Assembly: GCF_001194135.2 (NCBI RefSeq)
Contig: NC_068981.1
Location: forward strand, 146,753,102 to 146,817,101
DNA: 64,000 nt
Reading direction: 5' to 3'
From: Octopus bimaculoides
Lineage: Eukaryota
Every line of letters starts with the position of its first letter. The first letter of the stretch is position 1. The notes under the pieces were generated by a model. The model did no database searches and was not told the origin of the DNA. It was given only the letters and a program-made list of their open reading frames with translations. Positions 21,818 through 39,484 of this stretch are shown here, in pieces. The translations under genes were made by a program, and so were the position numbers.

Positions 21818-22409
21818 AAAAAAAAAAACATCCTGAAATATAATAATAATCATTTCACTATTTTTGATCTGTGGTTAACTCTTTAGCATTTAAACCAGCC
21901 ATAACTGACCCAAATATTCTATGTGATTTATGCCAAAACTGGCCTGATCTAACCTCTCACACTTCCCCTAAAATGTCATTCTAAAAATCTACAATTATAT
22001 CAGTGAAGTCTTGAAGCTACAAGATAATGCATAATTAATTCAAAACAATGTGAATAGATAAGCATTACACATGTCCAAGTAATCTGAATGCTAAAAGGAT
22101 TAAACTAACTGTTACAGCAACTCCAAAGATTGCCCTTTTATTACCTTCTGTTCAAAACTATGAAGGATATCATTTTTGCCCCCAAGGAATTACAATGATG
22201 TATCAAAGTTTATTACCAAGATTTCTTTGAGAGTAATAATTCTTATTCAAGATCAAATAGTTTCAAATTTTTACTACAGTTAATGACTGGCAGGTTTACT
22301 ATCGGGATGACAAGGAGTCTTTATAAAATGAATTTGGTTTAAAAAAATTAAAACAAAAATTTCAATTAAAAAAATGTAATAAATAATAAACACCTAATAT
22401 ATCAGATAC

Positions 22410-22656
22410 CTGGATCCGCATCGTACTGACTTGCATTTCACAAAAGAGGCGGATACATTTATAAAATGAGGATAAAACACTGCTTCCAATCAGATGAAGC
22501 ATAGGTTTATAAATATAAAGATAGTAAGGCAGTAGAACATGTTCCTGTTGAGAACTGCTAGCAATCACAATAAATAACATCATCTGTGGCAAGTTCCAAC
22601 AAGATGCATGCAAAGCACTCATTACTTTGCATAACCAGACTTTATGTAGTTCATGC
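22410..22656 (-). CDS. ABCC4: ABCC4-like variable exon 8c, HELHKVWLCKVMSALHASCWNLPQMMLFIVIASSSQQEHVLLPYYLYIYKPMLHLIGSSVLSSFYKCIRLFCEMQVSTMRIQ
   Basis: 247 bp, tcacag acceptor, gtatct donor, phase 2-0, no stops. Shares xELH start, P43 and SxxRIQ end with the other copies; 22/82 aa identical to 8a. Confidence 0.88.
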
Positions 22657-22743
22657 CTGTGAACAATAATAAAATATATATATATATATATATATAAAAA
22701 TTATTAAGGTGGCTATTCGCAACTTACAACCAAAGGGCAACAA

Positions 22744-22810
<67 letters not shown>

Positions 22811-23028
22811 AATATATACATATATAAATTATTAAGGTGCTTATTTGCAATTTACAACAGAAAGCAACAAGTGTATGTATGTATATCTATCTATCTATCT
22901 ATCTATTTATCTATTATCATCATCATCATCATCGTTTAACGTCCGCTTTCCATGCTAGCATGGGTTGGACGATTTGACTGAGGACTGGTGCAACCGGATG
23001 GCTACACTAGGCTCCAAATCTATATATA

Positions 23029-23062
<34 letters not shown>

Positions 23063-23394
23063 TTGTATGCATGTACATATGTCATCCTATGTGATAAAAT
23101 GCAAAGTGTGTCCCTATCGGTCATGCTGTAGACAAAGAAAAGTAAAACGGATGGCAGTGAGAGATGCTAAAGCATGTGGACAACATTTAAAGGCTTTACT
23201 CCGAAGATGCTAAGGCGAGAAGAGTAAAACAACAAATAGAGTGACAGTGAGTGACAGTGAGAGGCAGCTGACTGCAGGCAAACTGTAGTAAGCTCTGAAG
23301 TCACCAGTATTTTAATGAAAATGAAATTTAATTTTTATCATAATTTATATTTATCAATTTCACATACACACACTCCACAGTAGCATATATATGT

Positions 23395-23425
<31 letters not shown>

Positions 23426-24325
23426 NNNNNNNNNNNNNNNNNNNNNNNNNNNNNNNNNNNNNNNNNNNNNNNNNNNNNNNNNNNNNNNNNNNNNNNNNNN
23501 NNNNNNNNNNNNNNNNNNNNNNNNNGGATTAATCAATATGCAGATAATACAAAAATAACCTAATGAGAATATCTGACAGTAAACTCATGGTATCAGTTTG
23601 CACATCACGAAATAATGCTTAAAGGATATAAGCAAAATTACCAGTTGGGTATATAATATATTTAATTATATCATACTTTAGTTAATACTTATATTTATTG
23701 AATATGAAGGAACTACACGTCTTCAGGTTCTATTTCAAAATATTATATATCTAATTTTACACCCCTTTAAAAATAAGCAATACTATTAAGCATTAAAGAT
23801 TAAAAATTACGAATTAAAAATTAAGAATAAAAATTATACTTTGTAATATTAAGAATTAAAATTTATAAATTATACATTATAAATATGAATTAGTGTATAT
23901 ATCAATCATGTAAAATCAAGTATACATCAAATACAGAATGTGAGATATAAGATTAAACATCAGAATAAAAAATGTCTGTGTTTATTTGTGATATATAACA
24001 TGAAAAATTCAAATACATATCTTCCTTTTTTTGCTGGTACTAAAATAGTGATTTGAGGAAGAAGATAGCAGCAAACTATGGGTGATTAGTGCCAAGTGGG
24101 GTAATTACACTATACATAGTTTTAATTTAAATTATCCTCTATTATTATTTTCAAATTTACCTATATTGGGAGGTATGTCTAATTTGTTATTATATAATTT
24201 TAGTAAAATTTAATTCATATATTTATTTTATTTAAATTATTGCATTATTTATTTTTTATTTATATAGTTTAATCAAGTGCTTTAGAAATAAAATTATGTG
24301 GTTGTTTGATTCGGGGGTTGGGGGT

Positions 24326-24870
24326 TCAGTACTTCATTTTACTAAATGTAAAATTACTTCGGTGCTTACATTTAACTCCTCCTTTATCATGTGTGCTTAG
24401 TAATTCATCTCTAGACTGTAGTAGTTTCATAAATTCAGTTATGCATAATAAACACATTTTATTCCCAATATTATAGGAGTGGGCTCTACCTATAATACTC
24501 CAATTAAGGATCTACTCTCTTTTTCTAGATTTTAATTCCCATATATATTTACTTAAGCCTTTAGACTTACTTAAATTGGGATTTTTAAAGGTCTGGTACT
24601 ATTGGGATATTCTTTTTTTAATTTCATTAGCTGTTGATCCAATATAAGCCTTATTTATAATTTTATTATTATTGTTCTTAGAGTTAACTATACATTTATA
24701 AATTACATTATCTATATTACAATTATTAGAGAGCTTACATTTAGTCTTATCATGACATGAACATTTTTCTATGGGTCGATTAAGTTTTCTATCACTATTG
24801 GTTATATTATGGCTAGAGCTATTATTTATTATGCTATAATTATTTAATTTCTTATTATTTATAGAGGGAA
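24326..24870 (-). mobile_element. Penelope-like element, GIY-YIG endonuclease remnant
   Basis: CSCHDKTKCKLSNNCNIDNVIYKC..AYIGSTANEIKKRI..LSKYIWELK..WSII.RA..Y..G..C.LC..E..CKHR, with internal stops. Confidence 0.85.
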
Positions 24871-24892
24871 TGATATAGCCTACATTTCTCGA

Positions 24893-24934
<42 letters not shown>

Positions 24935-25632
24935 TCACACAACCACACACATACATATACATACACACATAAATATACATATATACGTATGAATATGTAC
25001 ATATGCACTCACACACACACATGCACACACAAATGCACACACAAACACATACATATATACATACAAGGCACAAGTGCAGCTGTGTGGTTAATAAGTGCTT
25101 TCCAATCACATGGTTTGGGTTTAGTGGCACCCCGGGCTTTTATGGAGCTCCAAGGTAGTGAGAGCCTTGTGAATGGATTTGTTAAACAGAAACCGAAAAT
25201 GGGGGGGTGTTTGTGTTTGTGTGTGTGCTGACATCCCTGTCATATACATGTCTTGACATCACATCACAGTTGTAAATGAATGTCACCGTCATACAAGCTG
25301 CGTCATTCCTTTGCAATATTCTGCAAAAATATGGTCATAGGGAAATAATATCTTGTTCAGAAGTAGGTGAGAACCAGTGGCAGGAAGGACATCTGGTCAT
25401 ACAAAATCTGCCTCAATAAAACTGTTTGACCCATGCATGTATGGAAAAGTAGATGTTATAAGGATGATATATTATATATTTCTTTATTGCCTACAGGGGA
25501 CTTAAACACAAATTGAACAAACAAGGACAGACAAAGGGATTATATATATATATATACACACATACATATATATATATATATATCATCATCATCGTTTAAC
25601 ATCCATTTTACAAGCTGGCATGGTTTTGACGG

Positions 25633-25692
<60 letters not shown>

Positions 25693-26500
25693 CAACGGGC
25701 CCAGATGGACTCCCAGCTGTTCTCTTGTTCTCTTAAAGACATGTAAAAAGGCTCTTGCAAAGCCACTGCAGACACTCTTTCAGAGTTTCCTTGCCTGTGG
25801 TAAACTTCCCAACATGTTAAAAGTGGGTATAATATGCCCTGTCCATAAAGGAGGGAGCAGAGCAGATACTAAAAACCACAGGCCCATCTCTCTGACCTCA
25901 CATGTTAGCAAGACAATGAAACGCATTGTCAGAAAAAGGATGATCACATTCGTAGAAGAAAACAACCTTCTTACAAACACGCAACATGGCTTCTGTCTAG
26001 GAAGGAGCTGCCTCACACAGTTGCTGCAACACTTTGACTAGTTACTGAAGCAACAGCTAAATCAGTCAGCTGTAGATGTGATATACCTCGACTTCGCCAA
26101 TATATATCACAAGCTGCAAAACCTTGGTATTACTGGGAAACTGGGAGAGTGGCTGAATGATTTTCTGAAGAGCAGGAAGCAGACAGATGTAGCCAATGGT
26201 GCTCACTCTGAAGAGAGAACACTTCTCAACAGAGTCCCACAGGGAACTGTACTGGAGCCCCTACTATTTGTAGTGGCCCTCTCAGACATGTCCTCCATGG
26301 TACAGTCAGCCAACCTGACCAGTTACGCTGACAACACAAAACTATCGCAGGCAGTTAGGAACCAAGAGGACATCATAAAACTGCAGAAAGACCTAAAAGA
26401 AATCTACAAATGGGATAAAATAACATGTAGTTCAATGCTATGAAATTTCAGGCACTCCACTATTGGTCCAACACCAGGCTAAAATCAAAATGCACTGGAC
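25693..26500 (+). mobile_element. CR1-like LINE reverse transcriptase fragment
   Basis: ATGPDG, PVHKGGSR..NHRPISLTS, QHGF..GRSCLTQL, IYLDFA, VPQGTVLEPLLF, YADNTK; disrupted by stops and deletions. Confidence 0.92.
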
Positions 26501-28071
26501 CAGAAGTCTCTCTCTTGTTGCTCACACGTGACCATCGTCCATCTTTCTCTTCCTTACATGATCATCTTTCTTTTCTTTCAGGGCTATCCTAAGGACAGCA
26601 CATATCCTATCTCTCTCTTCTATCTTTTCTCTTGTCAAAGAAAATATTTCTCCGGTGTTCACTATTTTATCCTCGTTCTGGTCTAACGACCCTCCATGTT
26701 TGTTTTCATTCAGCTTCCTTGTATGTCTCCACTGTCTTGTTTTTGTTCCCAACTTTGACCTTCCATAAATCCCAAATTTTATTTTGGTACTTATGGGAGC
26801 AACTGTCCTCGAAGACTCATAATGTCATTCAATGCTCAAAATGAGGAGTAGATAGACAGCCGACACCTGATGAAGGATTGTTCTTTATGTTACTTGTCCT
26901 GTTTTCCATTTGCTTTTCTCGTTGTTTGTGTATTGAACTCATTCGTTTTTATATTTCATGTTGTTTACTGTTTGTGACGTCCTGTACCCATATATGCATG
27001 TGTGTGTGTATATATANNNNNNNNNNNNNNNNNNNNNNNNNNNNNNNNNNNNNNNNNNNNNNNNNNNNNNNNNNNNNNNNNNNNNNNNNNNNNNNNNNNN
27101 NNNNNNNNNNNNNNNNNNNNNNNNNNNNNNNNNNNNNNNNNNNNNNNNNNNNNNNNNNNNNNNNNNNNNNNNNNNNNNNNNNNNNNNNNNNNNNNNNNNN
27201 NNNNNNNNNNNNNNNNNNNNNNNNNNNNNNNNNNNNNNNNNNNNNNNNNNNNNNNNNNNNNNNNNNNNNNNNNNNNNNNNNNNNNNNNNNNNNNNNNNNN
27301 NNNNNNNNNNNNNNNNNNNNNNNNNNNNNNNNNNNNNNNNNNNNNNNNNNNNNNNNNNNNNNNNNNNNNNNNNNNNNNNNNNNNNNNNNNATATATATAT
27401 ATATATATATATACATATGACCAGCTTCTTTCAGTTTCCCTCTACCAAATCCACTCACAAGGCTTTGGTCGTCCCAAGGCTATAGTAGAAGACACTTGTC
27501 CAAGGTGCCACATAGTGGGACTAAACCTGGGACCATGTGGTTGGAAAGCAAGCTTCTTACCACACAGCTACACCTACACACACACAAACACACACACATA
27601 CATGTACATATAAATATATATGTAAGTATATATGCAACAGGATTCTTTTCAGTTTCCACCAACCAAATTCACTTGCAAGGAGTTACAAATATGGGCAATA
27701 AGATTGAACCTGAAACCAAATGATCGCAAAGCAATACTCTTAACCATATAACCATACTTGTACCTATGCAATCATGCCTGTACCTACTACAGCCATGTGT
27801 GCAGCTGTAAAAATATTTGTTTCGTTTATATGTAAAACAGACAAAAGTAAAACAAGTAAGCAATCTTAGGAGAATGAATGCTCAGTGAGGACAAAAGAAG
27901 GAATAGATAAACAAGTACTTTAAGCAAGATAGTAAATAAATTATAGACATCAAGATTAGTAAGAAATTCAAGTCAGTAAATCAAAGCAAAAGCGTATATA
28001 AATAAGTAACTATTGACATTTCATACATATCCAGTTTTCATTAAAATATGAAATGAGTCTTCAATTTTTAC

Positions 28072-28318
28072 CTGGATTCTTTTAACACTTGATTTGGCCT
28101 CACTGAAATCTCTAATAGCAATAAATATAAAAACAAGCATATTTTCTGCAAGCAAGCGTATCAGAGGTATGAAAGTGAAAAGAGGTTCAGGCAATAGCCT
28201 ATTTCCAACCATATGTATTATCAGAATTGTCATATAAACAATAAAGTAATGAGCATCCATAGAGCATACATGGGTGGAACTCAAATATTTGGTCAGTTTA
28301 ACATGATGAAGCTCATGT
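28072..28318 (-). CDS. ABCC4: ABCC4-like variable exon 8b, HELHHVKLTKYLSSTHVCSMDAHYFIVYMTILIIHMVGNRLLPEPLFTFIPLIRLLAENMLVFIFIAIRDFSEAKSSVKRIQ
   Basis: 247 bp, tttcag acceptor, gtaaaa donor, phase 2-0. 52/82 aa identical to 8a by manual count; flanking introns are also similar to those of 8a. Confidence 0.92.
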
Positions 28319-28838
28319 CTGAAATACAAAGGAAGTAAAGCAACATAGAACACTATTACTATAGAGATAAAATTAACAAATGTAAAGATATACGTATGTA
28401 AACTGAAGGGATCTTTGGAGTAAGATCAACAGGACACATAACTCAACCAGGGAGAGAGCTCAACAGGAAGCATAGGTCAGAGACCAGGATGTCTCCCCAA
28501 GTCAAGCTACCACTTCTCCACATTCAGAGATCACAGCTATGGTACTATGAATATGTGGTTAGAGTGTCACAAAAAAGAATCACAAGAATCATCAAGCCAA
28601 GCCAACAAGTAGGAGACCTAGGGGTAGACCAAGAAGGAGATTAAAAAAAAAATTTTTTATGTTATCTAGTTTCAGCTCAAGAGCTGTGGCCATGCTGGGG
28701 CAATATCCATAATCTCATTTGGTCATGCTTGGGAATCCAACTTCTGAAAGGATCTGATAGAAAAGGCACCTCATATCTTTAACCCCTTGACCCTCCTAGG
28801 AATAGTAGGCAGCAAAAATGAGTGAATGGGTGGATAGG

Positions 28839-29215
28839 ATACAATGAAACTCAAGTCTGAAACACAAAGGGAGTAAAACATAGCAAAATATTTTATCATA
28901 TAGATGAAATTAACAAAATTAAAAATATTACTGGCTAATAAATGTTATATCATTATTAGCAAAGCTTATCAGAAGCCAATTTAGAATGCCACCACAATTG
29001 AAACTATTTTGATACACCAGGGGATGCTTGGCCAATAACTTGATAAAGTACATCTGCTTAGTAAGTCTGCATTCCATGAAATAGTTATGTGGTGAACAAC
29101 TGAAGCATAGTTAAGAGTATGTGAAAGAAATGTTTGTAAAATTTGCTGAACTTTTATAGGTTTGGTAGATCATGTTATCTCTGATTCAGCTGACCTATGA
29201 TTAACGGTATCTTAA
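28839..29215 (-). pseudogene. Relic exon-8 copy: intact acceptor, about 18 nt of exon start and about 360 nt of upstream intron
   Basis: ctccctttgtgtttcag|ACTTGAGTTTCATTGTAT matches the 8a start ttcctttgtatttcag|ACTTGAGCTTCATTATAT. 28857-29215 aligns by eye to 36276-36660. The reading frame then hits TAG after about 20 codons. Confidence 0.75.
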
Positions 29216-29499
29216 CTGTGATTATCCTATTTATTTCTGAAGCTCTGGGTAGAAGGACTGACCACAGCGGTTAGTGTAGGGCTGGAGATTAGACACAAGT
29301 GTGATGAGAGCAGGAAAGACAAGTGGGTCAGAAGTACCTAAGTGGAGGTAGCATGAACCCAACAAGTTCCAAGGATCGGAAACCAATTTTGTAACTGTAG
29401 AAAAGGTAGAGAAAGGAGACTTCATGCTTGTGGGCCAGAGGCTGGAATGTGATTGTGAGTGACTTTATGTAAATCATTCCAACAGCTCTTTTCTGAATG

Positions 29500-29745
29500 T
29501 GGTCTTGTGTGTTATTTCTTTACTACCCACAAGGGGCTACACACTGAGGGGACAAACAAGGACAGACAAACGGATTAAGTCGATTATATCGACCCCAGTG
29601 CATAACTGGTACTTATTTAATCGATCCCGTAAGGATGAAAGGCAAAGTCAACCTCGGCGGAATTTGAACTCAGAACGTAGCGGCAGACGAAATACTACTA
29701 AGCATTTCGCCAGGCGTGCTAACGTTTCTGCCAGCTCATCACCAT
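29500..29745. mobile_element. SINE-like family C; other copies at about 19080-19280, 30890-31000, 46780-46995, 51370-51582, 56150-56540
   Basis: Repeated aactggtacttattttatcgacccc.aaaggatgaaaggcaaagtcaacctcggcggaatttgaactcagaac. Confidence 0.8.
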
Positions 29746-29754
29746 GTGGTCGTG

Positions 29755-29844
<90 letters not shown>

Positions 29845-30019
29845 TGCGTACGTGTGTGTGAGTGTGTGTGTGTGTGTGTGCACGCATGCACAAGAGCAGC
29901 TTCACAGATATGAAGGTATTACTCCACAGTGGGTCTCACTTATGCTTTATAGAATGTTGATAGTTGTTGGGAGCTGAAAATCTTCTCGCTCTGAAGAGAA
30001 CAGCTAGTAATAAGATACA

Positions 30020-30640
30020 GGCCTAAGAGTGTGTAGGCTGAGATTTTATGTTTGGAAGAGATTTACTGAGTGTGCACAGTATGGAGTTGGTTGCAAAGTG
30101 AGCAGCAAAGGTGGAAGCTATCATTGTGGTGTCAAGATTACATGTAGATAATGCATGGATGAGGAAGATTATGGGACAACGAAGATAAGTATCATTTACA
30201 TAAGGATAAGTGACGTTGGATGTGATGATGGTAAGAAGGTCATTGATATGGAGAAGGAATAGAGTGGAAGACAAGACTAATCCTTGGGGAACCATCAGAG
30301 TTGATAGAACAAGAGACATAAAAAGCTCTGTCAATATACACTGAAATAGTGTGATCTGACAGAAAGCAACTGAACCAAGAGATGAAAGATGGGTTTAGCC
30401 CAAAGACAGGCACTTTCAATAAGAGATTTGCATTCTAGGCATGGTCAAAAACATTTCTGATGTTGCGGATGACAACACTGCTTCCACTAAATTTCTTCAA
30501 AGTGAGAACCCACTGAGAAGTAGGTTAGCAGTGGATATGGCTGTTCTGCTCATGGTCATTAGAGTGAGAAGTATGATAGGGGAACAGAGAGAAGAGAAAG
30601 GGATTCAAGGAGCTGAAGAACATTTTTGTTAATAGATGTC
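30020..30640 (-). mobile_element. LINE RT fragment
   Basis: NIRNVFDH..LLLKVPVFGL..FISWFSCFLSD and VPQGLVLSSTLFLLHINDL; degenerate. Confidence 0.8.
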
Positions 30641-33615
30641 TCCACTAGAAGTGAGTACAACTATGTGATAGTTGCTTTCTTTGTAGCCTGTTTCCAAAGA
30701 TCAGAATAATCCTAGTAGAAAGTAAGATATAGGATGTAAATCTACAAACTTTGAAGGAAAGGAGAGAAAATTGCTCAAAAGATTATTTTGGGTTTTTGCC
30801 AATTGAAGAAGAGTAGGGAGATAATTCATTGCTTGATCATGGCAACCTTCTGCCAGAGGACAGACCAAATGCTTGCTACAGAGCAAACACCATTTAAGGC
30901 AAAGTTGACCTTGGTGGAATTTGAACCCAGAATGTGAAGGTGGACGAAATACCACTAAGCATTTCACCCAGCATGCTAATGATTCTGCCAACTCACTGTC
31001 TTAATAATAGTAGTAATAATAATAACAGTAATGATAGCTGTAGTAGCAATAGTAGGAACAATAGGAACAAGAGCAGCAGTAACAGTATTAGTAATAGTAT
31101 CAGTAGTTGTAGCAGCAGCAGAAGTAGCAGTGGTAATGGTATCAGTAGCAGAAGACACCAGTATATCTGTTTGTTTAATGAATTTTGTGTAGTCTATTTT
31201 CAACCAACTTATTTCTTGATTTACATTAAACTTTCTGATATTCAGTTGCAAATGTTGATGAGGAGCAACTAAAGGATGTATCCACTTCAATGTTGTTGTC
31301 ATACATCGTTGTTGATTTACTTAGGTGAATATCATGCAATAACAGGGAATAATTCAGGCAGATAAACAAAAAGTTAAGGTAGTGACACTGTTGAGAGAAT
31401 CAGAGGCCGGCAGTGAGTAGGGATTTGGTGGTAAAATAAAACAAAACCATCTTGGATTGTAATTATATAGGAAATTATCAAGGATTGATTCAGATTTTAA
31501 AGATGGAAATTAGATATTCAGCAGTAGATGAAAACAAAACAAAAAAAAAAAAAAACATTACATTAGTAATCTGATTGGTAGATGTTTACTTGGGTCAGTA
31601 ATTAGTTAATATCATAGTTAATAAACAATAAGATTCTGGTTTATTGCCTATAAGCAACAAACCAATTAGGCAAATTTTCGCCATTTGTGGAAAACAATAC
31701 ATCTGGTGCTGAGATTACTGTTACATTTCAGGATAAGATAATATACAGTGGTTGAACATGTGTGGATTGAGAAGTGAAGGATCAGTTGTATTTACTATAT
31801 GGCATTGTTTTATTTTGATTTCTTTGTGATTAAAAGAATACTACACTCTTCTGCTTGTCTCAATTATTCAGGATAATTTTGTGTGTAGTAATTACATGGA
31901 ATGCATGTAGTGTGAGCATTTGTTAAAATGGGTCTGTTTTGTTTTGTTTATAATCAAAGGAACGTTAGTAAAATAGAACCACTTTCTTCACAACATTATA
32001 ACTTGAAGAGATTATACATTTAAAATATTATTTTATTAAATATATATATTATAGTATAGATGTGTAAAAACCAAAACTTCCTTTTTTAGAGCTGAGATTC
32101 GAAACCGAATCTAAGGATTCTCACTCATCTGATCTACCACTGGCCAAACAGGGGCAAAAGAAATTTCTTTGTCCTGTCAAAAAATGTTAGATAGTTTCCC
32201 TTCGACCTTAGCCATGTCATTTAAGGTTCAAGTGGACAGGAGGTGACCTACATAGGTAGGAATTTCTCCTGTGGTATGTCTGCCCTTCTAGCTGTCATGA
32301 TCATTATAAATACAGCAATCCATCAAGGAAAGCAGACAGAGACAGACGGAGAGAGAGAGATAGCCATGAGACAGCCAGCCAGTAACTTCACCAGTTAAAC
32401 AGATATTCAACATGAATGACAGTAGCAGTCACAGAACATAAACAGACACCACTGAATGACCAATGCACACACAGACGCAAAATATGTCCAGTTCTACCCT
32501 ATCATGTCAACACAGTATTTACCCTGTTAATTTCCTTTCGACCAGCTGGAAGCAGTTCATAATGTGATATAGTGAAATATTTGGTGTATACAACAAGTAA
32601 ATGCAAGTGTCATTTAAATAAATTATTTAAACGGCAATCCAATGTTTTCCCATTGTTTTACTTTGATATCGTCCACATGCCTATTTCAACTGCTACCTCA
32701 ACATCTTTTGCTACACCTTTCCCACTACAGATGTATTTAATAACAAATCACAGATTCTGTCCATGAAAACGAATTTTAAAAATATTGATTCAAACGACAG
32801 AAGATACAAGTAATTCTCTAAAGTACAGATTTCTATGTTTAAACAGAAATTACAACTGTGTGCAAAAAAAAAAAAACGAAATTTCACAGCCTAATTCCCC
32901 CCACCCCCAATTATTTCCCTTCTCAATATGACCTTTAAGCTAAGACTCTGTATCCTAACTCTAACTGACCTGCACCAGTTCTTCCTAAGAGAATTTTAAT
33001 CCTCTACTTTAGGCAAAGGAAAAACACATTCACCATCTTGTTGTTAATGATCCAGAAAACACCTACTTCTGGTGAGGCAAATACTTTCACTTTCTTGCAA
33101 TCTTGGAAACAAAGAAGGGTTGTTTCTTATTTAGAAAACACATCATTGAGAATTGTCAGTGAAATATAAATNNNNNNNNNNNNNNNNNNNNNNNNNNNNN
33201 NNNNNNNNNNNNNNNNNNNNNNNNNNNNNNNNNNNNNNNNNNNNNNNNNNNNNNNNNNNNNNNNNNNNNNNNNNNNNNNNNNNNNNNNNNNNNNNNNNNN
33301 NNNNNNNNNNNNNNNNNNNNNNNNNNNNNNNNNNNNNNNNNNNNNNNNNNNNNNNNNNNNNNNNNNNNNNNNNNNNNNNNNNNNNNNNNNNNNNNNNNNN
33401 NNNNNNNNNNNNNNNNNNNNNNNNNNNNNNNNNNNNNNNNNNNNNNNNNNNNNNNNNNNNNNNNNNNNNNNNNNNNNNNNNNNNNNNNNNNNNNNNNNNN
33501 NNNNNNNGTTATTCTATGCAAAATGGGTGTTTAACAATCCATTAGTTGAAAGCTTTTATTACCACAATGGATGGTTTTACACATGAACAGAAAACTTATG
33601 ATAAACTTTTATTAT

Positions 33616-33663
<48 letters not shown>

Positions 33664-33910
33664 CACTGTACCAAAAGCTACACCTGAGCAGAAACAAAAG
33701 ATGTAATTATTGTAGTTAGAATCAATTTGAATAAAGTTTTGGTATCTTGAAGCAACTTCCAAAAAGAGAGAAAAATTAAAAGTTTTAAAAAATAGAAATT
33801 TATTTAAAGTAAAAGAAAATCAGAATCACAGCTAAATTTAAAATTCATGCATCTGTAAATATATTCATAAACGCACGCAGAATTTCTTACATATAAAAAT
33901 TTACTTTCAG

Positions 33911-34293
33911 GTGAAAGTGACACAGCAGATGAAGGAGCTGGTCTAATATGATATCACCCTTTATCCAAGACAGTGGGTGATCAACAAATAAGATGAAAGT
34001 CACATCAATGAACTTTAAACAGATAAATATATCACTGAAATATTTAGAAATGCAAAATCAGAAACATTATATGTAAATTCACAGACAAATAATAAAATCA
34101 AACTACTGAAGGATGAATTCTGGGATCATGTAACTAGATTGACAGCTTATTCATTCAAGGCTTACTTTTCTCAACAGGATTAGAAACTTAGCACTTAAAG
34201 TATTGTGCTCACCATATTTAGTGCGTTAACAGTTACTTTACTAATTATTTTCAATGCTGATGTCATCCCTGAGTAATTTTTTTTCATTCATTA
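33911..34293 (+). repeat. Direct duplicate of 40663-41052
   Basis: About 340-380 bp, roughly 85-90% identical by eye, offset about 6.75 kb. Confidence 0.9.
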
Positions 34294-36028
34294 TGCTATG
34301 TTTAACACTTTCTTGAGTGTATTACTGTTCATACATAAGGTAATTCTTATATTACAGATCTGGTATGTACAGTAAAGACTTAATGACTATGCTTTCATAA
34401 GGAGGCCTACTGAGATGTCAGTTAACATGTCTTGTACTGTCACCATGCCAATCAAAGATTAGATTAATTTTTATGTTCAATTCATGCCTATTCTTAATTT
34501 TAAATTAACTGAGATAATTGTTTTATCAACTCATTTTGATATTTGAAATATATGGCAGAATGCAATGAGATAGAAACAATGGAAGTCCTAAAATCATGCA
34601 AAAAGATCAGGAAAGTAGTGGAACACAGCATCAAAGAAGAAGGAATAAAAGAAAATTTTAAAGACCCAGAATGGCTTAAGAAAGCCACAAAGATAATCAA
34701 AAGAATTGAAGAAACATATGTGGAAATGAGAAGAGAGAAGAGAGATGTGGATGAGGTAAAAACCATTGTGTTAAAATAGCTCACTTTCAAATTATGTATT
34801 CTCTAAGGATAGTGAAGTAAGCAGTGATAGAATCACAAATCATGTATTACTTTCTTTGACTCAATCTGCTTAGCTGATAATGTTAGTGATTCCAATTTCA
34901 GGGTTAAGTAATTACCACAGATGGTTGTGTGGTTACGGAGTTCACCTCACAACTGTGTAGTTTTGCATTTAATTCCACTGCACAGCACTTTGGGCAGGTG
35001 TCTTCTAGCTTTGAGTTGACTCAGTACTGTCTTAAGGTATGTTAAAGGCATACTGGGATTGCCGAGGGCTTTGTAGATCTAGGGTCTAATCCTGATCTAT
35101 TATACAGTGGTTTGCTTAAAAAAATAAGTCATTTCGAGCCCAGTGCACTGATTTACCTAGGGGCCTATAATGCTCCTTAGACAGTCATGAGTTGATCAAA
35201 ACCATGTGACTGGAATGTGGCAGACAGAAACTGTGCAGTGACCCATTTTGTGTGCATGCATGTGTATTTATGTGCATAAGTTGCACCATTTCATACAAAT
35301 GCCAGTAAGAAACACCAAAACAAATGATTCAAATGAAGTCTCTTGGATCAGGTTAGATATTTCTTTGCCATTATCACTGATAGAAAGCAAGTGATCCAGT
35401 GATTGGCTTGTTGGAAAACTGTAAAAAATGATACTGTTGTTTACAAATTGTTATATAAAATGTTAACAAAGCATATCAATTAGGAGAGGCAGCCAGCTAT
35501 AAATATATTTGTTTAATTAATTTGTATAAGAATATATAAATTTACAAAAATAAAACCATCTCAGTTAAACAAACTTAAGAAAACGTTTATTGAATTATAT
35601 CAAAAGAAGCACCAGAAAGGCAAGTATTTTAAGCAAGATAGTTAATATACAATAGACACTAAGATTAGCAAGCAACTCCAGTCAGCAAATCCAGACAAAA
35701 ACAACTCAATGATAAGAAGCTGCAGACATCAGTAAAATCTAGTTTCATTAAAAATATTAAGTGCTAAAAATAAAAAGAAACTGCTAGGTGATGTTATAAA
35801 CAGATAAAATGAGTTTGAAATGTGATGTTTTTACACACGATCATGCAAACCAAAGCAAGAAAGAATAGAATAGATATGTAGAGAAAGATAAAATCTATAT
35901 CATCAACTAATGAAAGCAAATGAAAACATGAGAATGTGCAGAAAAGTGTCCAACCAAAATGTTACATGCCAAGTAAAGAAGTGTTGTAATAATTATAGCA
36001 AGCACCAGAAAAAAACATTCCATTTTAC

Positions 36029-36275
36029 CTGGATTCTTTTAACACTTGATTTGGCTTCATTAAAATTTCTGATAGCCATGAATATAAAGAACAGCATACT
36101 AAATGATAGTATGTGCATCAGAGGGCGTATAATGAAAAGAGTTTCAGGGAATATCTTATTTCCCACTGTGTATATTATCACAACTGTTATATAAACAAGA
36201 AAGTAGTGAGCATCTAAACTGCATAAATGTATGGAACTCAAATATTTGGTCATCTTAATATAATGAAGCTCAAGT
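36029..36275 (-). CDS. ABCC4: ABCC4-like variable exon 8a, LELHYIKMTKYLSSIHLCSLDAHYFLVYITVVIIYTVGNKIFPETLFIIRPLMHILSFSMLFFIFMAIRNFNEAKSSVKRIQ
   Basis: 247 bp, tttcag acceptor, gtaaaa donor, phase 2-0, no stops. Ends in EAxxSVKRIQ, like the ABCC4 TM6 exit EAIVSIRRIQ. Confidence 0.92.
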
Positions 36276-37819
36276 CTGAAATACAAAGGAAGTAAAACAA
36301 AACAAAGTACCATTACTATAGAGATGAAATTAAAGATAAAATGTAAAGATATTAGTCATTTTGATAAGTATTGAATATTTCAACTGGTTATTAAATATTA
36401 TATTATGGTATCAAAGCTTATTACAATCCAATTCAGTATACCTCACTTCCTTTCCTCGTAATTAAAACCATATGAACATATCAAAAGCAGTTGGACTGAC
36501 AACCTAGTAAAGCACATCCATTTAGTGTCCCATGAATTAAGTGCATGGTGATGAATTGTAGCATGGTCTAAGACTAGATTAAAGAAATATTTATAAAAAT
36601 TTTCAAGATATTCATAGGTCTTCTAGATCAAGCCATTTTAATTTCATCTGATATGTGATCAAAAGAGTCCCACCTGTGATAATCCCTCAAGATGAGAAGT
36701 GGTAAATTCACAATTGCTCCCATTGTTATTACTTAGCTAAGGTCAACCTTTATCAGTCTTATGATCAAAGACACTCCCATTGTGACCACCCAGTTGTTTT
36801 AAAAAGTAAAAAAGACTCCCTTCAGTCATGAATGACCAAGAGATTGCACCAAGACAGTTCCTCTCCTAGGCACACAAGTCTTGGCATGATTGCTTATGGA
36901 AGACAAGCAGTTGCCCATGCATACCAGCCTCCCCCTCTCCACACCACCAATGTTATCAGCTCGGCACTAGTGACAATGATTCATTTCTACAGCTGAGTGA
37001 ACTGGAGCAGCATGAGATAAAGTGTCTTGCTCAAGAACACAACACACAGCCTGGCTCGGGAACTGAACTCACTACCTCATGATTGTGAGCCAGATGTTTC
37101 TAACCACTGAGCCATGAGCAAGTATGTGTAAGACTACATTATCTAATGTTTCCTTTCTTCAATTAAGACAGCAGGATGTGAATTAAGGGAGAATAGGTTG
37201 CTATTTCTAGATCATGTGACCACACTGATGCTCTTTTGTTGACTTGTGATAGCAAGAGTATTCCAGTGAAGAGCAGTGACCAGTTATTAGCTTTGAAAGA
37301 CATAATGATGGTACAATGTCACAAAACTACTATAATTAATGGGATATGTGATGCATTTGTCATTGTGTGCGATGTAGTCAACAGAGAAAGAAGAAAGTAG
37401 ATATTAATACATTACTAAAATAGAGACATTTACCATACAATATTTGAAGTTTTTTATATATATGAAAAAAAATGCTTTATTAAATACATGTATCAAAATA
37501 ACGTTTCACAGATTCAGGTGAACAGTTCATGAACATGAATTAAACAAATATTGATGATAGATGATAGACAACAGATAGTAAATAGCAGATGACAGTAGTA
37601 ATTTTCTAAAATGCAGCTGAGGGTCAGGTAGTGGATTGGATGATTCAATAAAACATCAAATAAAATGTCTGAAATATTAAGATACAGACTGTTTACATTC
37701 TGAGTTCAAGTCCCATTGAGATCTACTTGCTCTTTCATTCCTTCCAGGGAAGAAATATAAAGCATTCTACTCATGAATGGAATTATAATTGAAGACTAAC
37801 ATTTTTATGCATGAATATA

Positions 37820-38156: not shown

Positions 38157-39484
38157 TACAGTTTACATTGTACCCAGCTATCCACATTAATTTTATATAT
38201 GAATGAGTGTTTGGAGGGTATATTTGAGTGTATTTGGGATGCAGGGGCTCAGATAAATGTAGTACCTTTGCTACTTGTCAGCTGTACTTTGCCAGGGATG
38301 GTCAGGTGGATGGGCATCACTGGTCCTCATTCAGCTCCTAATTTCTTACTTGAGGGCTCTTAGCACCACACCCCAATGCCCCACTTCAACTGATGGGCTA
38401 AACTAAGTGAGGGGATGATGTTAACATTGCATCAATAAGCAAAAGGTATTTGGTAAAGTTTCCCACAGAGTCATCAGCTAGGATGTTGGAACCTACTCAG
38501 GTCAATGGCCTAGTGTTCGGGGGTCAAGGCATGTCACAAGTAGAGGCATGCGGTTGTGGCTAATAGCTTTGAGGGGAATGGGTGCTGCCAAGCTAACTTA
38601 CCCACGATATGTTTAGGATGATGGTAACCATACCAGAACCCATACCACATTGGTTGTCTCCAAGGTTAACATCAAAACGTGGACAGGTTTCAATTTTGTC
38701 AACTCACAGACAACAGCAGAAGACTGAGAAAAGTAGCAAAATCTGGTTGTGACATCATCAATGAATACCTCAATGACCACATGGTCAAGTGATAAGAAGA
38801 ATGGAATGAGGTATTTTAGTATATGTATGCATATATATGCATGTAGATATGTATAAATGTACAAATACACCCTCCTGGGTCTGGTCTTGTCATGTTCCAT
38901 AGATCCGGGAGAGCAATTACCATCTGGATCTTTACTCCTGGTAGGGACACCCTAGGTGGGCAAGTCTCCTGGGGAGGTTCCAGACTAACAGTCACCCACA
39001 GAATGTTGGCTCATTGCCAAGATGGCAGCCCCATCATCTGACTATTCTGCAGAGGACCAACAACCCACCCAGAAGAACTTTCAGCCTGTTGCAACACTGA
39101 CCAGAAGAAACCAGACTACCCAACATTGGTACAGACCCCTGCATGCCCCCAGACAATGAAAAATCAACTTACACTACAAAATTCATGTTGCTACATGGAA
39201 CCAGTATGTATAAATGTATATGTTTATATCTGTAAAGCCTCTATTTAGCACCAACTTTTGCAACCCTAACCCCTCTCATCTTCCTGGTAATCACTTTTCA
39301 GCTTTCACTCATCTCCCCACTCACTTCAACCATCTCATCTTTCTGTCAATCATACCTCTCCGTCCTTTGTCTCCCCAGCATCTATGAAGCTTGTAGTCTA
39401 TGAATGGCTGCACTTCATATCATTTCCTTTAGTCTCTCTCTCCATTTCTTTCACTACACTTACCTCTCTATTTCTCTGTCTATG

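What the first reader, a model, noticed from the sequence alone, without database searches (positions are those of the whole stretch)
22410..36275. The swappable cassette is the TM5-TM6 substrate-pocket segment, and pocket positions differ between variants
Established (recalled, numbering approximate): human ABCC4 exon 8 encodes residues about 304-387, including substrate-contacting F324, L363, L367, F368 and R375. Seen: anchoring on the terminal RIQ, the positions equivalent to L367/F368/E374/R375 read F/F/R/N in 8a, V/F/R/D in 8b, S/S/R/L in 8c and Y/F/K/T in 8d (8d lies at 8349-8595). Charge and bulk therefore change between cassettes, and 8c has an unusually polar SSSQQEH loop. Inference: exon choice tunes substrate specificity (xenobiotics, cyclic nucleotides, prostanoids, prey toxins), which would be combinatorial detoxification by splicing.
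Basis: partly seen in the sequence, partly recalled or inferred. Interest (0 to 1): 0.75.

Follow-up and report, generated by a model that had tools for sequence, protein, structure and literature searches.

The report
Four swappable exons in octopus ABCC4
An octopus drug-and-metabolite export pump gene (ABCC4/MRP4 type) carries four alternative copies of the exon that builds two membrane helices lining its cargo pocket, so the animal can probably make four versions of the pump from one gene; a similar trick is already known in related pump genes of flies and worms.

Summary
The window (Octopus bimaculoides, minus strand) holds part of an ABCC4/MRP4-type gene. The exon for the TM5-loop-TM6 hairpin (human residues 304-387) is present as four tandem copies. 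Each is exactly 247 nt, AG/GT-bounded and in the same phase: 8a 36029-36275, 8b 28072-28318, 8c 22410-22656, 8d 8349-8595. They lie between single-copy exon 7 (52048-52173) and exon 9 (3171-3281). One copy keeps the frame; none or two gives a stop. The three gaps are intronic. A gap-free Argonauta hians locus has 8a/b, 8c and 8d in the same order (dN/dS 0.12-0.28), so each cassette lineage is a maintained coding exon. Cryo-EM papers name F324, R362, L363, L367 and F368 as ligand contacts; the cassettes read L/M/W/W, S/A/G/T, F/E/S/R, F/V/S/Y and F/F/S/F there. However, R375 is defined by mutagenesis, not contact. Position 374 stays basic. 75 of 83 positions vary, so pocket change is not specific. 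No transcript data were reachable, so substrate tuning is plausible but untested. Mutually exclusive exon clusters are already known in MRP1-type genes: a new member of a known kind.

The parts
63793..63900 (-). Upstream constitutive exon (human ABCC4 residues about 177-212, ..[19 protein letters not shown]); boundaries approximate
   Evidence: tblastn with a human ABCC4 probe. 79% nucleotide identity to Argonauta L001 23631-23745. Identical to O. bimaculoides protein P0002.
55870..56037 (-). Constitutive exon (human residues about 207-262); boundaries approximate
   Evidence: 87% nucleotide identity to Argonauta.
52048..52173 (-). Constitutive exon 7 (126 nt; RCKTAIFTDQRMALMNEIIAGMRILKLYCWEIPYGKLVRDVR plus AG of a split codon). 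Donor is AAG|GTTTGT.
   Evidence: The public O. bimaculoides model P0002 reads through this donor into the intron.
36029..36275 (-). Cassette 8a, 247 nt: (R)LELHYIKMTKYLSSIHLCSLDAHYFLVYITVVIIYTVGNKIFPETLFIIRPLMHILSFSMLFFIFMAIRNFNEAKSSVKRIQ
   Evidence: AG/GT sites, length and frame. 57% amino-acid identity to the single Argonauta 8a/b cassette, dN/dS 0.28.
28072..28318 (-). Cassette 8b, 247 nt, a young copy of 8a (66% aa identity, dS 0.38). It carries the derived pocket changes F363E, F367V and N375D.
   Evidence: About 80 nt of upstream intron is shared with 8a. Its contig is bounded by gaps on both sides.
22410..22656 (-). Cassette 8c, 247 nt, the most divergent copy (S/S at 367/368, polar SSSQQEH turn)
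   Evidence: 80% aa identity to Argonauta 8c (241 nt, still 1 mod 3), dN/dS 0.12. AlphaFold2 model is helix-turn-helix, pLDDT 83.
22278..22409 (-). About 130 nt of intron just downstream of 8c, conserved with Argonauta (candidate splicing control element)
   Evidence: The blastn block runs on past the exon; alignment at 81% column identity.
8349..8595 (-). Cassette 8d, 247 nt; the last copy and the closest to human in tblastn score (29% identity). Its first residue is S instead of R.
   Evidence: 80% aa identity to Argonauta 8d, dN/dS 0.24.
12088..12135 (-). Conserved intronic element upstream of 8d (GCTGGTTCAAT..GGCTGAGATTTTGT); one arm of a candidate long-range RNA duplex
   Evidence: Conserved at the colinear place in Argonauta, L001 41553-41590. 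Complementary to 4017-4065.
4017..4065 (-). Conserved intronic element between 8d and exon 9 (AATAAAATCTCAGCTCCC..AGGTTGAACCATC); the other arm
   Evidence: Conserved with L001 44719-44770. Duplex energy -42.0 kcal/mol in the window and -38.8 in Argonauta, z = -5.9 and -5.3 against shuffles. Ranked 2nd and 1st of all intron windows. No other copy in either locus and no Rfam family.
3171..3281 (-). Constitutive exon 9 (111 nt, phase 0: DFLVLEELPAVPAITNECSDNQAPSIVMNNVCANWNK)
925..1020 (-). Constitutive exon 10 (ESNSNNMILDDISVSLNDNQLLAVVGPVGAGK; Walker A of NBD1)
23426..23525 (.). Assembly gap in the 8b-8c intron, 770 nt from 8c; a (GT)n run lies on one side
27017..27390 (.). Assembly gap in the 8b-8c intron, 682 nt from 8b; TA-rich repeats on both sides
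33172..33507 (.). Assembly gap in the 8a-8b intron, 2.5 kb from 8a; unique sequence on both sides

Best explanation
The feature is a cluster of four tandemly duplicated, mutually exclusive exons in an Octopus bimaculoides ABCC4/MRP4-type ABC exporter gene.

Shown by the sequence: each copy encodes the whole TM5-turn-TM6 hairpin of the first membrane domain, with the same length (247 nt), the same phase and canonical splice sites. Only transcripts with exactly one copy stay in frame. None or two gives an early stop, which would be expected to send the transcript to nonsense-mediated decay.

Shown by comparison: three cassette lineages (8a/b, 8c, 8d) predate the Octopus-Argonauta split and are each kept under purifying selection. 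8b is a younger copy of 8a.

Shown by homology to solved human MRP4: the hairpin supplies the TMD1 hydrophobic face of the substrate pocket. The cassettes differ there. 8a is F/F/F at 363/367/368. 8b is E/V/F, with D at 375. 8c is S/S/S. 8d is R/Y/F.

Inferred: the four isoforms have different substrate ranges or affinities and are chosen by tissue or condition.

Inferred, weaker: a conserved pair of complementary intron elements flanking 8d loops 8d out of the pre-mRNA. That would let an upstream cassette be joined to exon 9.
For: - Exon anatomy and frame tests.
- Exactly four copies, with every flanking exon present once.
- Same cluster and order in a gap-free Argonauta hians locus, with AG/GT sites and lengths of 247, 241 and 247 nt (all 1 mod 3).
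- Orthologue identity of 57-80% against paralogue identity of 22-34%; dN/dS 0.12-0.28.
- ABCC4 is the best solved relative, with E = 1e-16 for the 8d and 8a queries against 4e-6 and 3.5e-12 respectively for MRP1.
- Pocket residues taken from four cryo-EM papers.
- Residue table.
- Derived acidic changes in the 8b pocket.
- 8c folds in silico as helix-turn-helix.
- RNA arms.
- Precedent for mutually exclusive clusters in MRP genes: PMC4588896, PMC6071210, PMC7434440, PMC9741552.
Against: - No transcript evidence of any kind was reachable. No protein in the searched collection contains an Octopus cassette. The public O. bimaculoides model stops at exon 7.
- The cassettes differ at 75 of 83 positions, so pocket differences are not enriched over background (P = 0.35).
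- The one-residue deletion relative to human lies at or next to F324, so that assignment is uncertain by one residue.
- None of the four cassettes keeps the human-like R362/L363/L367 set, which a mussel and an abalone cassette largely keep. Mapping human ligand contacts onto this protein is therefore an extrapolation.
- Only one conserved RNA pair was found, not a set of competing selectors. One stem position is mismatched in Argonauta.
Confidence: 0.6

Rival explanations
1. The cassettes are real mutually exclusive exons, but what differs between isoforms is not mainly cargo choice. It could be transport rate, gating of the outer gate, coupling to NBD1, fit to a tissue's membrane lipids or temperature, stability, or trafficking.
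For: Variation is spread over the whole hairpin: 75 of 83 positions differ, including the lipid-facing faces and the outer turn, and there is no enrichment at pocket positions. The turn itself differs strongly (GNK, GNR, QQEH, FGI), and 8c has a 2-residue length change between species. TM5 and TM6 bend during the inward-to-outward switch (PMC10202912).
Against: Known ligand-contact positions change in charge and size between cassettes (F/E/S/R at 363). They are held fixed between species within 8c and within 8d. In human MRP4, single changes at F368, L367 and R375 alter transport in a substrate-dependent way.
Confidence: 0.25
2. Only one cassette (for example 8d, next to exon 9) makes the working protein. 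The others are rarely used, or serve as frame-breaking 'poison' exons that lower expression when two are included.
For: Including two cassettes gives an immediate stop. In Drosophila MRP, usage of the eight variants is very uneven and one was not seen (PMC4588896). No Octopus transcript evidence exists for any cassette.
Against: All cassette lineages keep open frames and splice sites in two genera, with dN/dS 0.12-0.28. 8c, the oddest copy, is the most constrained at 0.12. A poison exon needs no conserved protein sequence. The Argonauta gene model joins exon 7 directly to 8c.
Confidence: 0.1
3. The repeated exon is an assembly artefact: haplotype copies or mis-scaffolded contigs from paralogous genes.
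For: Each cassette lies on a separate contig between gaps. The 8b contig has gaps on both sides and no Argonauta counterpart.
Against: The copies are 22-66% identical in protein, far beyond allelic difference. The flanking exons occur only once. The same order is seen in a gap-free chromosome-scale Argonauta contig. A bivalve shows two tandem copies of the same exon.
Confidence: 0.03

Closest known systems
Mutually exclusive exon clusters of MRP1-type (ABCC1-like) genes: Drosophila MRP/CG6214 (clusters of 2 and 8 exons) and C. elegans mrp-1. Independent clusters are reported in molluscs and annelids by Yue et al. 2017, RNA Biol 14:1399.
   Same: An ABCC exporter gene in which a tandemly duplicated internal exon of fixed length is chosen one at a time. 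Clusters arose repeatedly in different phyla. Intronic RNA pairing has been implicated in exon choice (PMC4588896, PMC6071210, PMC7434440, PMC9741552).
   Different: This gene is the short, TMD0-less ABCC4/MRP4 type, not the MRP1 type. I could not read Yue et al. 2017. I therefore cannot say which protein segment their clusters encode, or whether an ABCC4-type mollusc gene was among them. Here only one conserved RNA pair was found, not a docking site with several selectors.
Human/bovine MRP4 (ABCC4) substrate pocket as solved by cryo-EM (8BJF, 8BWO-R, 8I4A-C, 8SWN, 8SX7-B, 9KRL-N)
   Same: The same fold segment is involved: TM5 and TM6 of TMD1. Their residues F324, R362, L363, L367 and F368 contact prostaglandins, DHEA-S, methotrexate, cAMP, topotecan and sulindac. 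The octopus cassettes align without gaps from G343 to Q387.
   Different: Vertebrate ABCC4 has a single copy of this exon as far as the papers read here show. The octopus cassettes are only 18-31% identical to human in this segment, and none keeps R362/L363/L367.
CaV1.2 (CACNA1C) mutually exclusive exons 8/8a encoding transmembrane segment IS6
   Same: A swap of one membrane-helix exon in a transport protein by mutually exclusive splicing, with functional consequences (PMC3060452, listed).
   Different: It is an unrelated protein family with two exons rather than four. Its regulation is by PTB protein rather than any known RNA pairing.
Tandem copies of the same exon in a bivalve ABCC4-like gene (Sinanodonta woodiana, locus L003)
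   Same: Same exon position and phase, with two 250-nt AG/GT-bounded copies 5.5 kb apart.
   Different: There are two copies, not four, each one codon longer. One copy is human-like (H/L/M/F at 362/363/367/368) and the other divergent. Whether the duplication is shared with cephalopods is unresolved.

Membership tests
ABCC4/MRP4-type (short MRP) ABC exporter | ABC transporter type-1 transmembrane domain (Pfam PF00664) | tested here: met
   Precomputed PF00664 on the O. bimaculoides protein P0002 (100% identical to window exons) and on Argonauta P0001.
ABCC4/MRP4-type (short MRP) ABC exporter | Closer to ABCC4 than to other ABCC members | tested here: met
   Exon 7 plus cassette against PDB. 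With 8d: ABCC4 E = 1.3e-16 against MRP1 4e-6. With 8a: 1.2e-16 against 3.5e-12. With 8c: 1.4e-11 against 5e-6. Only about 126 residues were tested.
ABCC4/MRP4-type (short MRP) ABC exporter | No extra N-terminal membrane domain (TMD0); the protein starts just before TM1 | tested here: met
   P0002 starts MEKAKQHYNPNPMMKANFISKLFYWWLNPL. This aligns with the start of the mollusc and human ABCC4 proteins retrieved. The N-terminal exons lie outside the window.
ABCC4/MRP4-type (short MRP) ABC exporter | NBD1 with a Walker A motif follows TM6 | tested here: met
   Exon 10 encodes LLAVVGPVGAGK. The rest of the gene is outside the window.
ABCC4/MRP4-type (short MRP) ABC exporter | ATP-driven export of organic anions, cyclic nucleotides or prostanoids | not testable with these tools
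   Needs a transport assay.
Mutually exclusive exon cluster from tandem exon duplication | Two or more homologous exons in tandem between the same two constitutive exons | tested here: met
   Four homologous copies between exon 7 and exon 9; all other exons are single.
Mutually exclusive exon cluster from tandem exon duplication | Same length, same phase, own canonical splice sites | tested here: met
   All copies are 247 nt with AG...GT and run from a split first codon to phase 0. In Argonauta the lengths are 247, 241 and 247 nt.
Mutually exclusive exon cluster from tandem exon duplication | Joint inclusion or joint skipping breaks the reading frame | tested here: met
   With no cassette, a stop falls in exon 9. 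Any pair gives a stop at the start of the second cassette.
Mutually exclusive exon cluster from tandem exon duplication | Each copy is maintained as coding sequence | tested here: met
   dN/dS is 0.12 (8c), 0.24 (8d), and 0.28 and 0.19 (8a and 8b against Argonauta 8a/b).
Mutually exclusive exon cluster from tandem exon duplication | Mature transcripts contain exactly one copy, and more than one copy is used | not testable with these tools
   No RNA data could be reached. The only hints are gene models. Argonauta P0001 joins exon 7 to 8c. The Octopus model stops at exon 7.
Docking-site/selector competing RNA structures (Dscam, 14-3-3 zeta, Mhc, MRP type) | Conserved intronic element complementary to another conserved intronic element in the cluster | tested here: met
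   Window 12088-12135 pairs with 4017-4065. Both are conserved at colinear places in Argonauta. Energies are -42.0 and -38.8 kcal/mol, z = -5.9 and -5.3.
Docking-site/selector competing RNA structures (Dscam, 14-3-3 zeta, Mhc, MRP type) | Several selector sequences, one per variable exon, competing for one docking site | tested here: not met
   Only one conserved partner was found. A dock-like 14-mer at 30036-30049 lies in a LINE fragment and is absent from Argonauta. Other strong duplexes are not at orthologous places.
Docking-site/selector competing RNA structures (Dscam, 14-3-3 zeta, Mhc, MRP type) | Disrupting and restoring the pairing changes exon choice | not testable with these tools
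   Needs minigene or in vivo mutagenesis.

The most novel reading that the evidence does not exclude
Octopods have kept, since before the Octopus-Argonauta split, an ABCC4-type pump whose cargo pocket is swapped as a module. The versions would be a hydrophobic pocket (8a), an acidic one (8b, a recent Octopus gain with E363 and D375), a small polar one (8c) and a basic one (8d, R363). The choice between the last cassette and the upstream ones would be set by a conserved long-range RNA loop around 8d. If so, one gene would cover anionic, neutral and possibly cationic cargo in different tissues. That would be a splice-level alternative to the gene-family expansion seen in other molluscs and arthropods.
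Probability: 0.2. Interest if true: 0.7.

Novelty: new member of a known kind. Interest (0 to 1): 0.5.

Why it matters
If the four isoforms differ in cargo, this is a natural experiment in how the TM5-TM6 face sets MRP4 selectivity. There are four complete, evolution-tested pocket halves on one constant scaffold, directly usable for chimeras with human MRP4, a drug-resistance and prostaglandin exporter.

It also matters for annotation. The public Octopus and Argonauta gene models break exactly at this cluster, and several mollusc ABCC4 models end right after this exon. Transporter counts and expression studies in molluscs are therefore likely to be misreading such genes.

It adds an ABCC4-type case to the repeated, independent origin of mutually exclusive exons in ABCC pumps. 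It also offers a simple two-arm RNA structure to test in an animal group known for heavy RNA-level regulation.

Tried and rejected
1. Protein search with the four cassettes concatenated. It found only one hit, an Argonauta partial model. No Octopus transcript-derived protein was found, so there is no expression evidence.

2. Exact-sequence contig look-up of the O. bimaculoides model P0002 and of the Mya protein P0007. Neither is on record, so no second Octopus assembly was available to close the gaps.

3. Full TMD1 model (P0002 N-terminus plus cassette plus exon 9). Only the 82-residue 8c cassette could be modelled. Foldseek of that hairpin against PDB gave nothing meaningful (E above 2). Lipid-facing versus cavity-facing orientation therefore had to be judged from alignment to published MRP4 contact lists.

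4. Yue et al. 2017, the key prior paper on MRP exon arrays across phyla, is not held.

5. Search for a fifth, human-like cassette using mollusc cassettes and a profile HMM. None was found.

6. Haliotis locus L002. Only one cassette was found from exon 7 through 10 kb downstream of the cassette, so it is uninformative about older origin.

7. Neighbour-joining tree of cassettes. It is unresolved, with octopod cassettes monophyletic in 103 of 200 bootstraps, so the age of the cluster beyond Octopoda is open.

8. Test of whether pocket positions vary more than others among 8a, 8c and 8d. They do not.

9. Rfam scan of 3000-13000. It returned only microsatellite false hits below threshold.

10. The strongest duplex among conserved blocks (10162-10123 with 8941-8893) turned out to be an inverted pair of a high-copy SINE. 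It was set aside as a repeat.

11. The dock-like 14-mer at 30036-30049 was rejected as a selector: it lies inside an RT-like fragment and is not conserved.
Full report
WHAT IS THERE

The window is AT-rich (34% G+C), rich in repeats, and has 12 assembly gaps. A human ABCC4 probe finds single hits on the minus strand for residues 177-212 (63900-63793), 207-262 (56037-55870), 261-304 (52178-52047) and 423-459 (1011-901). It also finds several hits for residues about 304-387.

Reading the DNA gives four exons of exactly 247 nt: 8a 36029-36275, 8b 28072-28318, 8c 22410-22656 and 8d 8349-8595. Each follows a pyrimidine tract plus AG and is followed by GT. Each is open in one frame only, with several stops in the other two.

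Exon 7 (52048-52173) ends AAG|GT and leaves two bases of a codon. Each cassette completes that codon, giving R, R, R and S, and ends on a full codon (..RIQ). Exon 9 (3171-3281, DFLVLEEL..) starts in phase 0, and exon 10 (925-1020) carries the Walker A motif.

With exactly one cassette the frame runs through. With none, a stop falls in exon 9. With any two, a stop falls at the start of the second cassette. A profile HMM of the cassette family run on all six frames finds these four copies (87-99 bits) and nothing else above 1.6 bits.

THE GAPS

The three gaps in the finding's range all lie in introns, 682 to 2522 nt from the nearest cassette, so frame continuity across them is not an issue. Two border simple repeats. 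Each cassette sits on its own contig, so order and orientation depend on scaffolding.

This was checked against a gap-free locus of Argonauta hians (L001, chromosome-scale contig BAAFZT010000006.1). That locus has exon 6, exon 7, one 8a/b-type cassette (29809-30055, 247 nt), 8c (38524-38764, 241 nt), 8d (43481-43727, 247 nt), exon 9 and exon 10. They are in the same order and strand, all with AG/GT sites.

The order 8a, 8c, 8d in the window is therefore right. The place of 8b, whose contig has gaps on both sides, rests on scaffolding alone. A further copy inside a 336- or 374-base gap cannot be excluded.

WHOSE GENE IT IS

A UniRef protein of Octopus bimaculoides (P0002, 309 aa) is 100% identical to the window's exons. 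It then reads through the exon 7 donor into the intron (..VRDVRRFVYSSSLFH). The window is therefore O. bimaculoides, and the public model is cut off exactly where the cluster begins.

P0002 starts like ABCC4, with no TMD0. Exon 7 plus a cassette matches solved ABCC4 far better than MRP1 or other ABCC members.

ARE ALL FOUR REAL EXONS?

Orthologous cassettes are much more alike than paralogous ones. 8c is 80% identical and 8d 80% identical to their Argonauta counterparts, and 8a is 57% identical to Argonauta 8a/b. Paralogous cassette lineages are 22-34% identical.

Nei-Gojobori dN/dS values are 0.12 (8c), 0.24 (8d), and 0.28 and 0.19 (8a and 8b against Argonauta 8a/b). The 2-codon length change in 8c keeps the 1-mod-3 length.

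The three lineages are thus older than the Octopus-Argonauta split, and each is kept as coding sequence. This argues against relic or purely frame-breaking exons.

8a and 8b are a younger pair (dS 0.38, dN/dS 0.57). They share about 80 nt of upstream intron and almost nothing downstream. Argonauta has one copy.

PDB numbering (8bjf_A) confirms that RIQ ends at 387. From G343 to Q387 the cassettes align to human without gaps, anchored by G343, A372-I373, E378-A379, S382 and R385-I386-Q387.

Positions 367/368/374/375 read F/F/R/N, V/F/R/D, S/S/R/L and Y/F/K/T, exactly as stated.

The single-residue deletion relative to human falls at F324/F325 in the HMMER and MAFFT alignments of 8a and 8d, and at 321 in that of 8c. 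The F324 equivalent (L/M/W/W) is therefore uncertain by one residue.

WHICH RESIDUES TOUCH CARGO IN MRP4

Four structure papers agree on F324 (TM5) and L363, L367 and F368 (TM6) as the TMD1 hydrophobic face of the pocket. R362 binds the sulfate of DHEA-S (PMC10202912, PMC11948813, bioRxiv 10.1101/2022.12.12.520055 and 10.1101/2022.12.22.521501). None of them names E374 or R375. Their importance comes from mutagenesis (El-Sheikh 2008, as cited in PMC6188748).

The table below gives each position in the order: human; window 8a/8b/8c/8d; Argonauta 8ab/8c/8d.

- 324: F; L/M/W/W; I/W/W
- 362: R; S/A/G/T; A/G/T
- 363: L; F/E/S/R; F/S/R
- 367: L; F/V/S/Y; F/S/Y
- 368: F; F/F/S/F; F/S/F
- 374: E; R/R/R/K; K/R/K
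- 375: R; N/D/L/T; N/V/T

Position 374 is basic in every copy. Within 8c and within 8d, all five contact positions are identical between the two genera.

HOW SPECIFIC IS THE POCKET VARIATION?

It is not specific. Only 8 of 83 positions are the same in all four cassettes: E306, L307, H308, P348, S382, R385, I386 and Q387. Three of five contact positions are different in all three lineages, against 42% overall (P = 0.35).

The one suggestive signal is in the young pair. 8a and 8b differ at 30 of 83 positions but at 4 of 5 contact positions (P = 0.055). With Argonauta as outgroup, 8b has gained F363E, F367V and N375D, which are two new acidic groups on the cavity-facing side of TM6.

THE POLAR STRETCH OF 8c

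An AlphaFold2 model of the 8c cassette alone, using a 19-row alignment, gives helix 2-36, turn 37-42 (QEHVLL) and helix 43-81, with mean pLDDT 83. SSSQQEH therefore sits at the outer end of TM5 and in the outer turn, not in the pocket. Argonauta has SCTSQH there.

A full-domain model could not be run. The hairpin alone finds nothing in PDB by fold.

HOW EXCLUSIVITY MAY BE ENFORCED

The introns between cassettes are 5-14 kb, and all splice sites are GT-AG. Steric hindrance and spliceosome incompatibility are therefore unlikely mechanisms. Frame surveillance is built in.

Comparing introns between the two genera shows few conserved blocks. Two of them are complementary:

- window 12088-12135, about 3.5 kb upstream of 8d (GCTGGTTCAAT..GGCTGAGATTTTGT);
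- window 4017-4065, about 740 nt upstream of exon 9 (AAAATCTCAGC..GGTTGAACCA).

Their orthologues lie at L001 41553-41590 and 44719-44770.

The duplex energy is -42.0 kcal/mol in the window and -38.8 in Argonauta (z = -5.9 and -5.3 against dinucleotide shuffles). The pair ranks 2nd of 4597 intron windows in the window and 1st of 1875 in Argonauta. Neither arm has other copies in either locus, and no Rfam family matches.

Between species, two G-U pairs become G-C and A-U, and one A-U becomes a U-U mismatch. The pair encloses 8d only.

My inference is that pairing loops 8d out and brings the upstream cassettes near exon 9. I found no set of competing selectors, so this is not the classical docking-site system.

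COMPARISON WITH WHAT IS KNOWN

Mutually exclusive exon clusters in ABCC pumps are established. Drosophila MRP has clusters of 2 and 8 exons, and 9 of 16 possible isoforms were seen by nanopore sequencing (PMC4588896). C. elegans mrp-1 has one as well. Independent clusters in molluscs and annelids were reported by Yue et al. 2017, according to PMC6071210, PMC7434440 and PMC9741552.

Those are MRP1-type genes. I could not read Yue et al., so I cannot exclude that an ABCC4-type mollusc gene was covered.

The same exon is also duplicated in a freshwater mussel, Sinanodonta woodiana. It has two 250-nt copies in the same phase (L003 95971-96220 and 101680-101929). Several mollusc ABCC4 models stop right after this exon. 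The phenomenon is probably wider than cephalopods.

A tree of the cassettes does not resolve whether the duplications are shared.

VERDICT

The reading 'a swappable TM5-TM6 pocket segment' is sound as anatomy.

The reading 'exon choice tunes substrate specificity' is the most likely function but rests on homology and conservation only. I put it at about 0.5-0.6. I put about 0.9 on the cluster being a genuine mutually exclusive exon set.

The claim about R375 as a contact residue and the claim about charge change at 374 need correction.

Novelty: a new member of a known kind. Interest is moderate.

Noticed in passing
window 52017-52199 (minus); proteins P0002 and P0001; L001 10001-38668 and 43659 onward: Public gene models break at the cluster. 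The O. bimaculoides model reads through the exon 7 donor and stops. The Argonauta gene is split into one model ending inside 8c and another starting inside 8d. Several mollusc ABCC4 models (Haliotis, Mytilus, Mya, Patella) end with intron read-through right after this exon.
   Followed up: partly
window 12088-12135 and 4017-4065; L001 41553-41590 and 44719-44770: A conserved, complementary pair of intron elements encloses cassette 8d in both genera (-42 and -39 kcal/mol, z about -5.5). It is a candidate loop-out switch.
   Followed up: partly
window 12214-12352 (minus); L001 41374-41507: A further 140-nt conserved intron block lies just upstream of the RNA arm. Its function is unknown; it has no Rfam match and no open frame.
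   Followed up: partly
window 22278-22409 (minus); L001 38765-38889: About 130 nt of intron directly downstream of 8c is conserved between genera, far more than around the other cassettes. It may hold splicing control elements.
   Followed up: no
window 10123-10162 and 8893-8941; L001 42016-42052 and 42701-42749: An inverted pair of a high-copy SINE (core GGTTTCTACAGCTGGATGCCCTTCCTAAC) lies 0.3-1.5 kb upstream of 8d in both genera. The predicted duplex is about -56 kcal/mol. Such double-stranded RNA could also affect splicing or attract RNA editing.
   Followed up: partly
L003 95971-96220 and 101680-101929 (Sinanodonta woodiana): A freshwater mussel ABCC4-like gene has two tandem 250-nt copies of the same exon, in the same phase and with AG/GT sites. 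One copy is human-like and one is divergent. The deposited protein wrongly contains both.
   Followed up: partly
window 25814-26443 (+) and 30023-30334 (-): Reverse-transcriptase-like open frames (LINE fragments) lie in the 8b-8c and 8a-8b introns. The second contains a 14-mer resembling the RNA arm, probably by chance.
   Followed up: partly
window 36276-36355 and 28319-28398 (minus): The roughly 80 nt upstream of 8a and of 8b are more alike than the exons' silent sites. The last 27 nt are also conserved in Argonauta. This is a likely shared branch-point and acceptor control region.
   Followed up: no
one search hit list: The hit list holds many partial 'ABCC4-like' proteins from ruminants (Bos, Capra, Bison, Cervus, Muntiacus, Rangifer). 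This suggests ABCC4 fragments or copies in those genomes. It is unrelated to the octopus finding.
   Followed up: no
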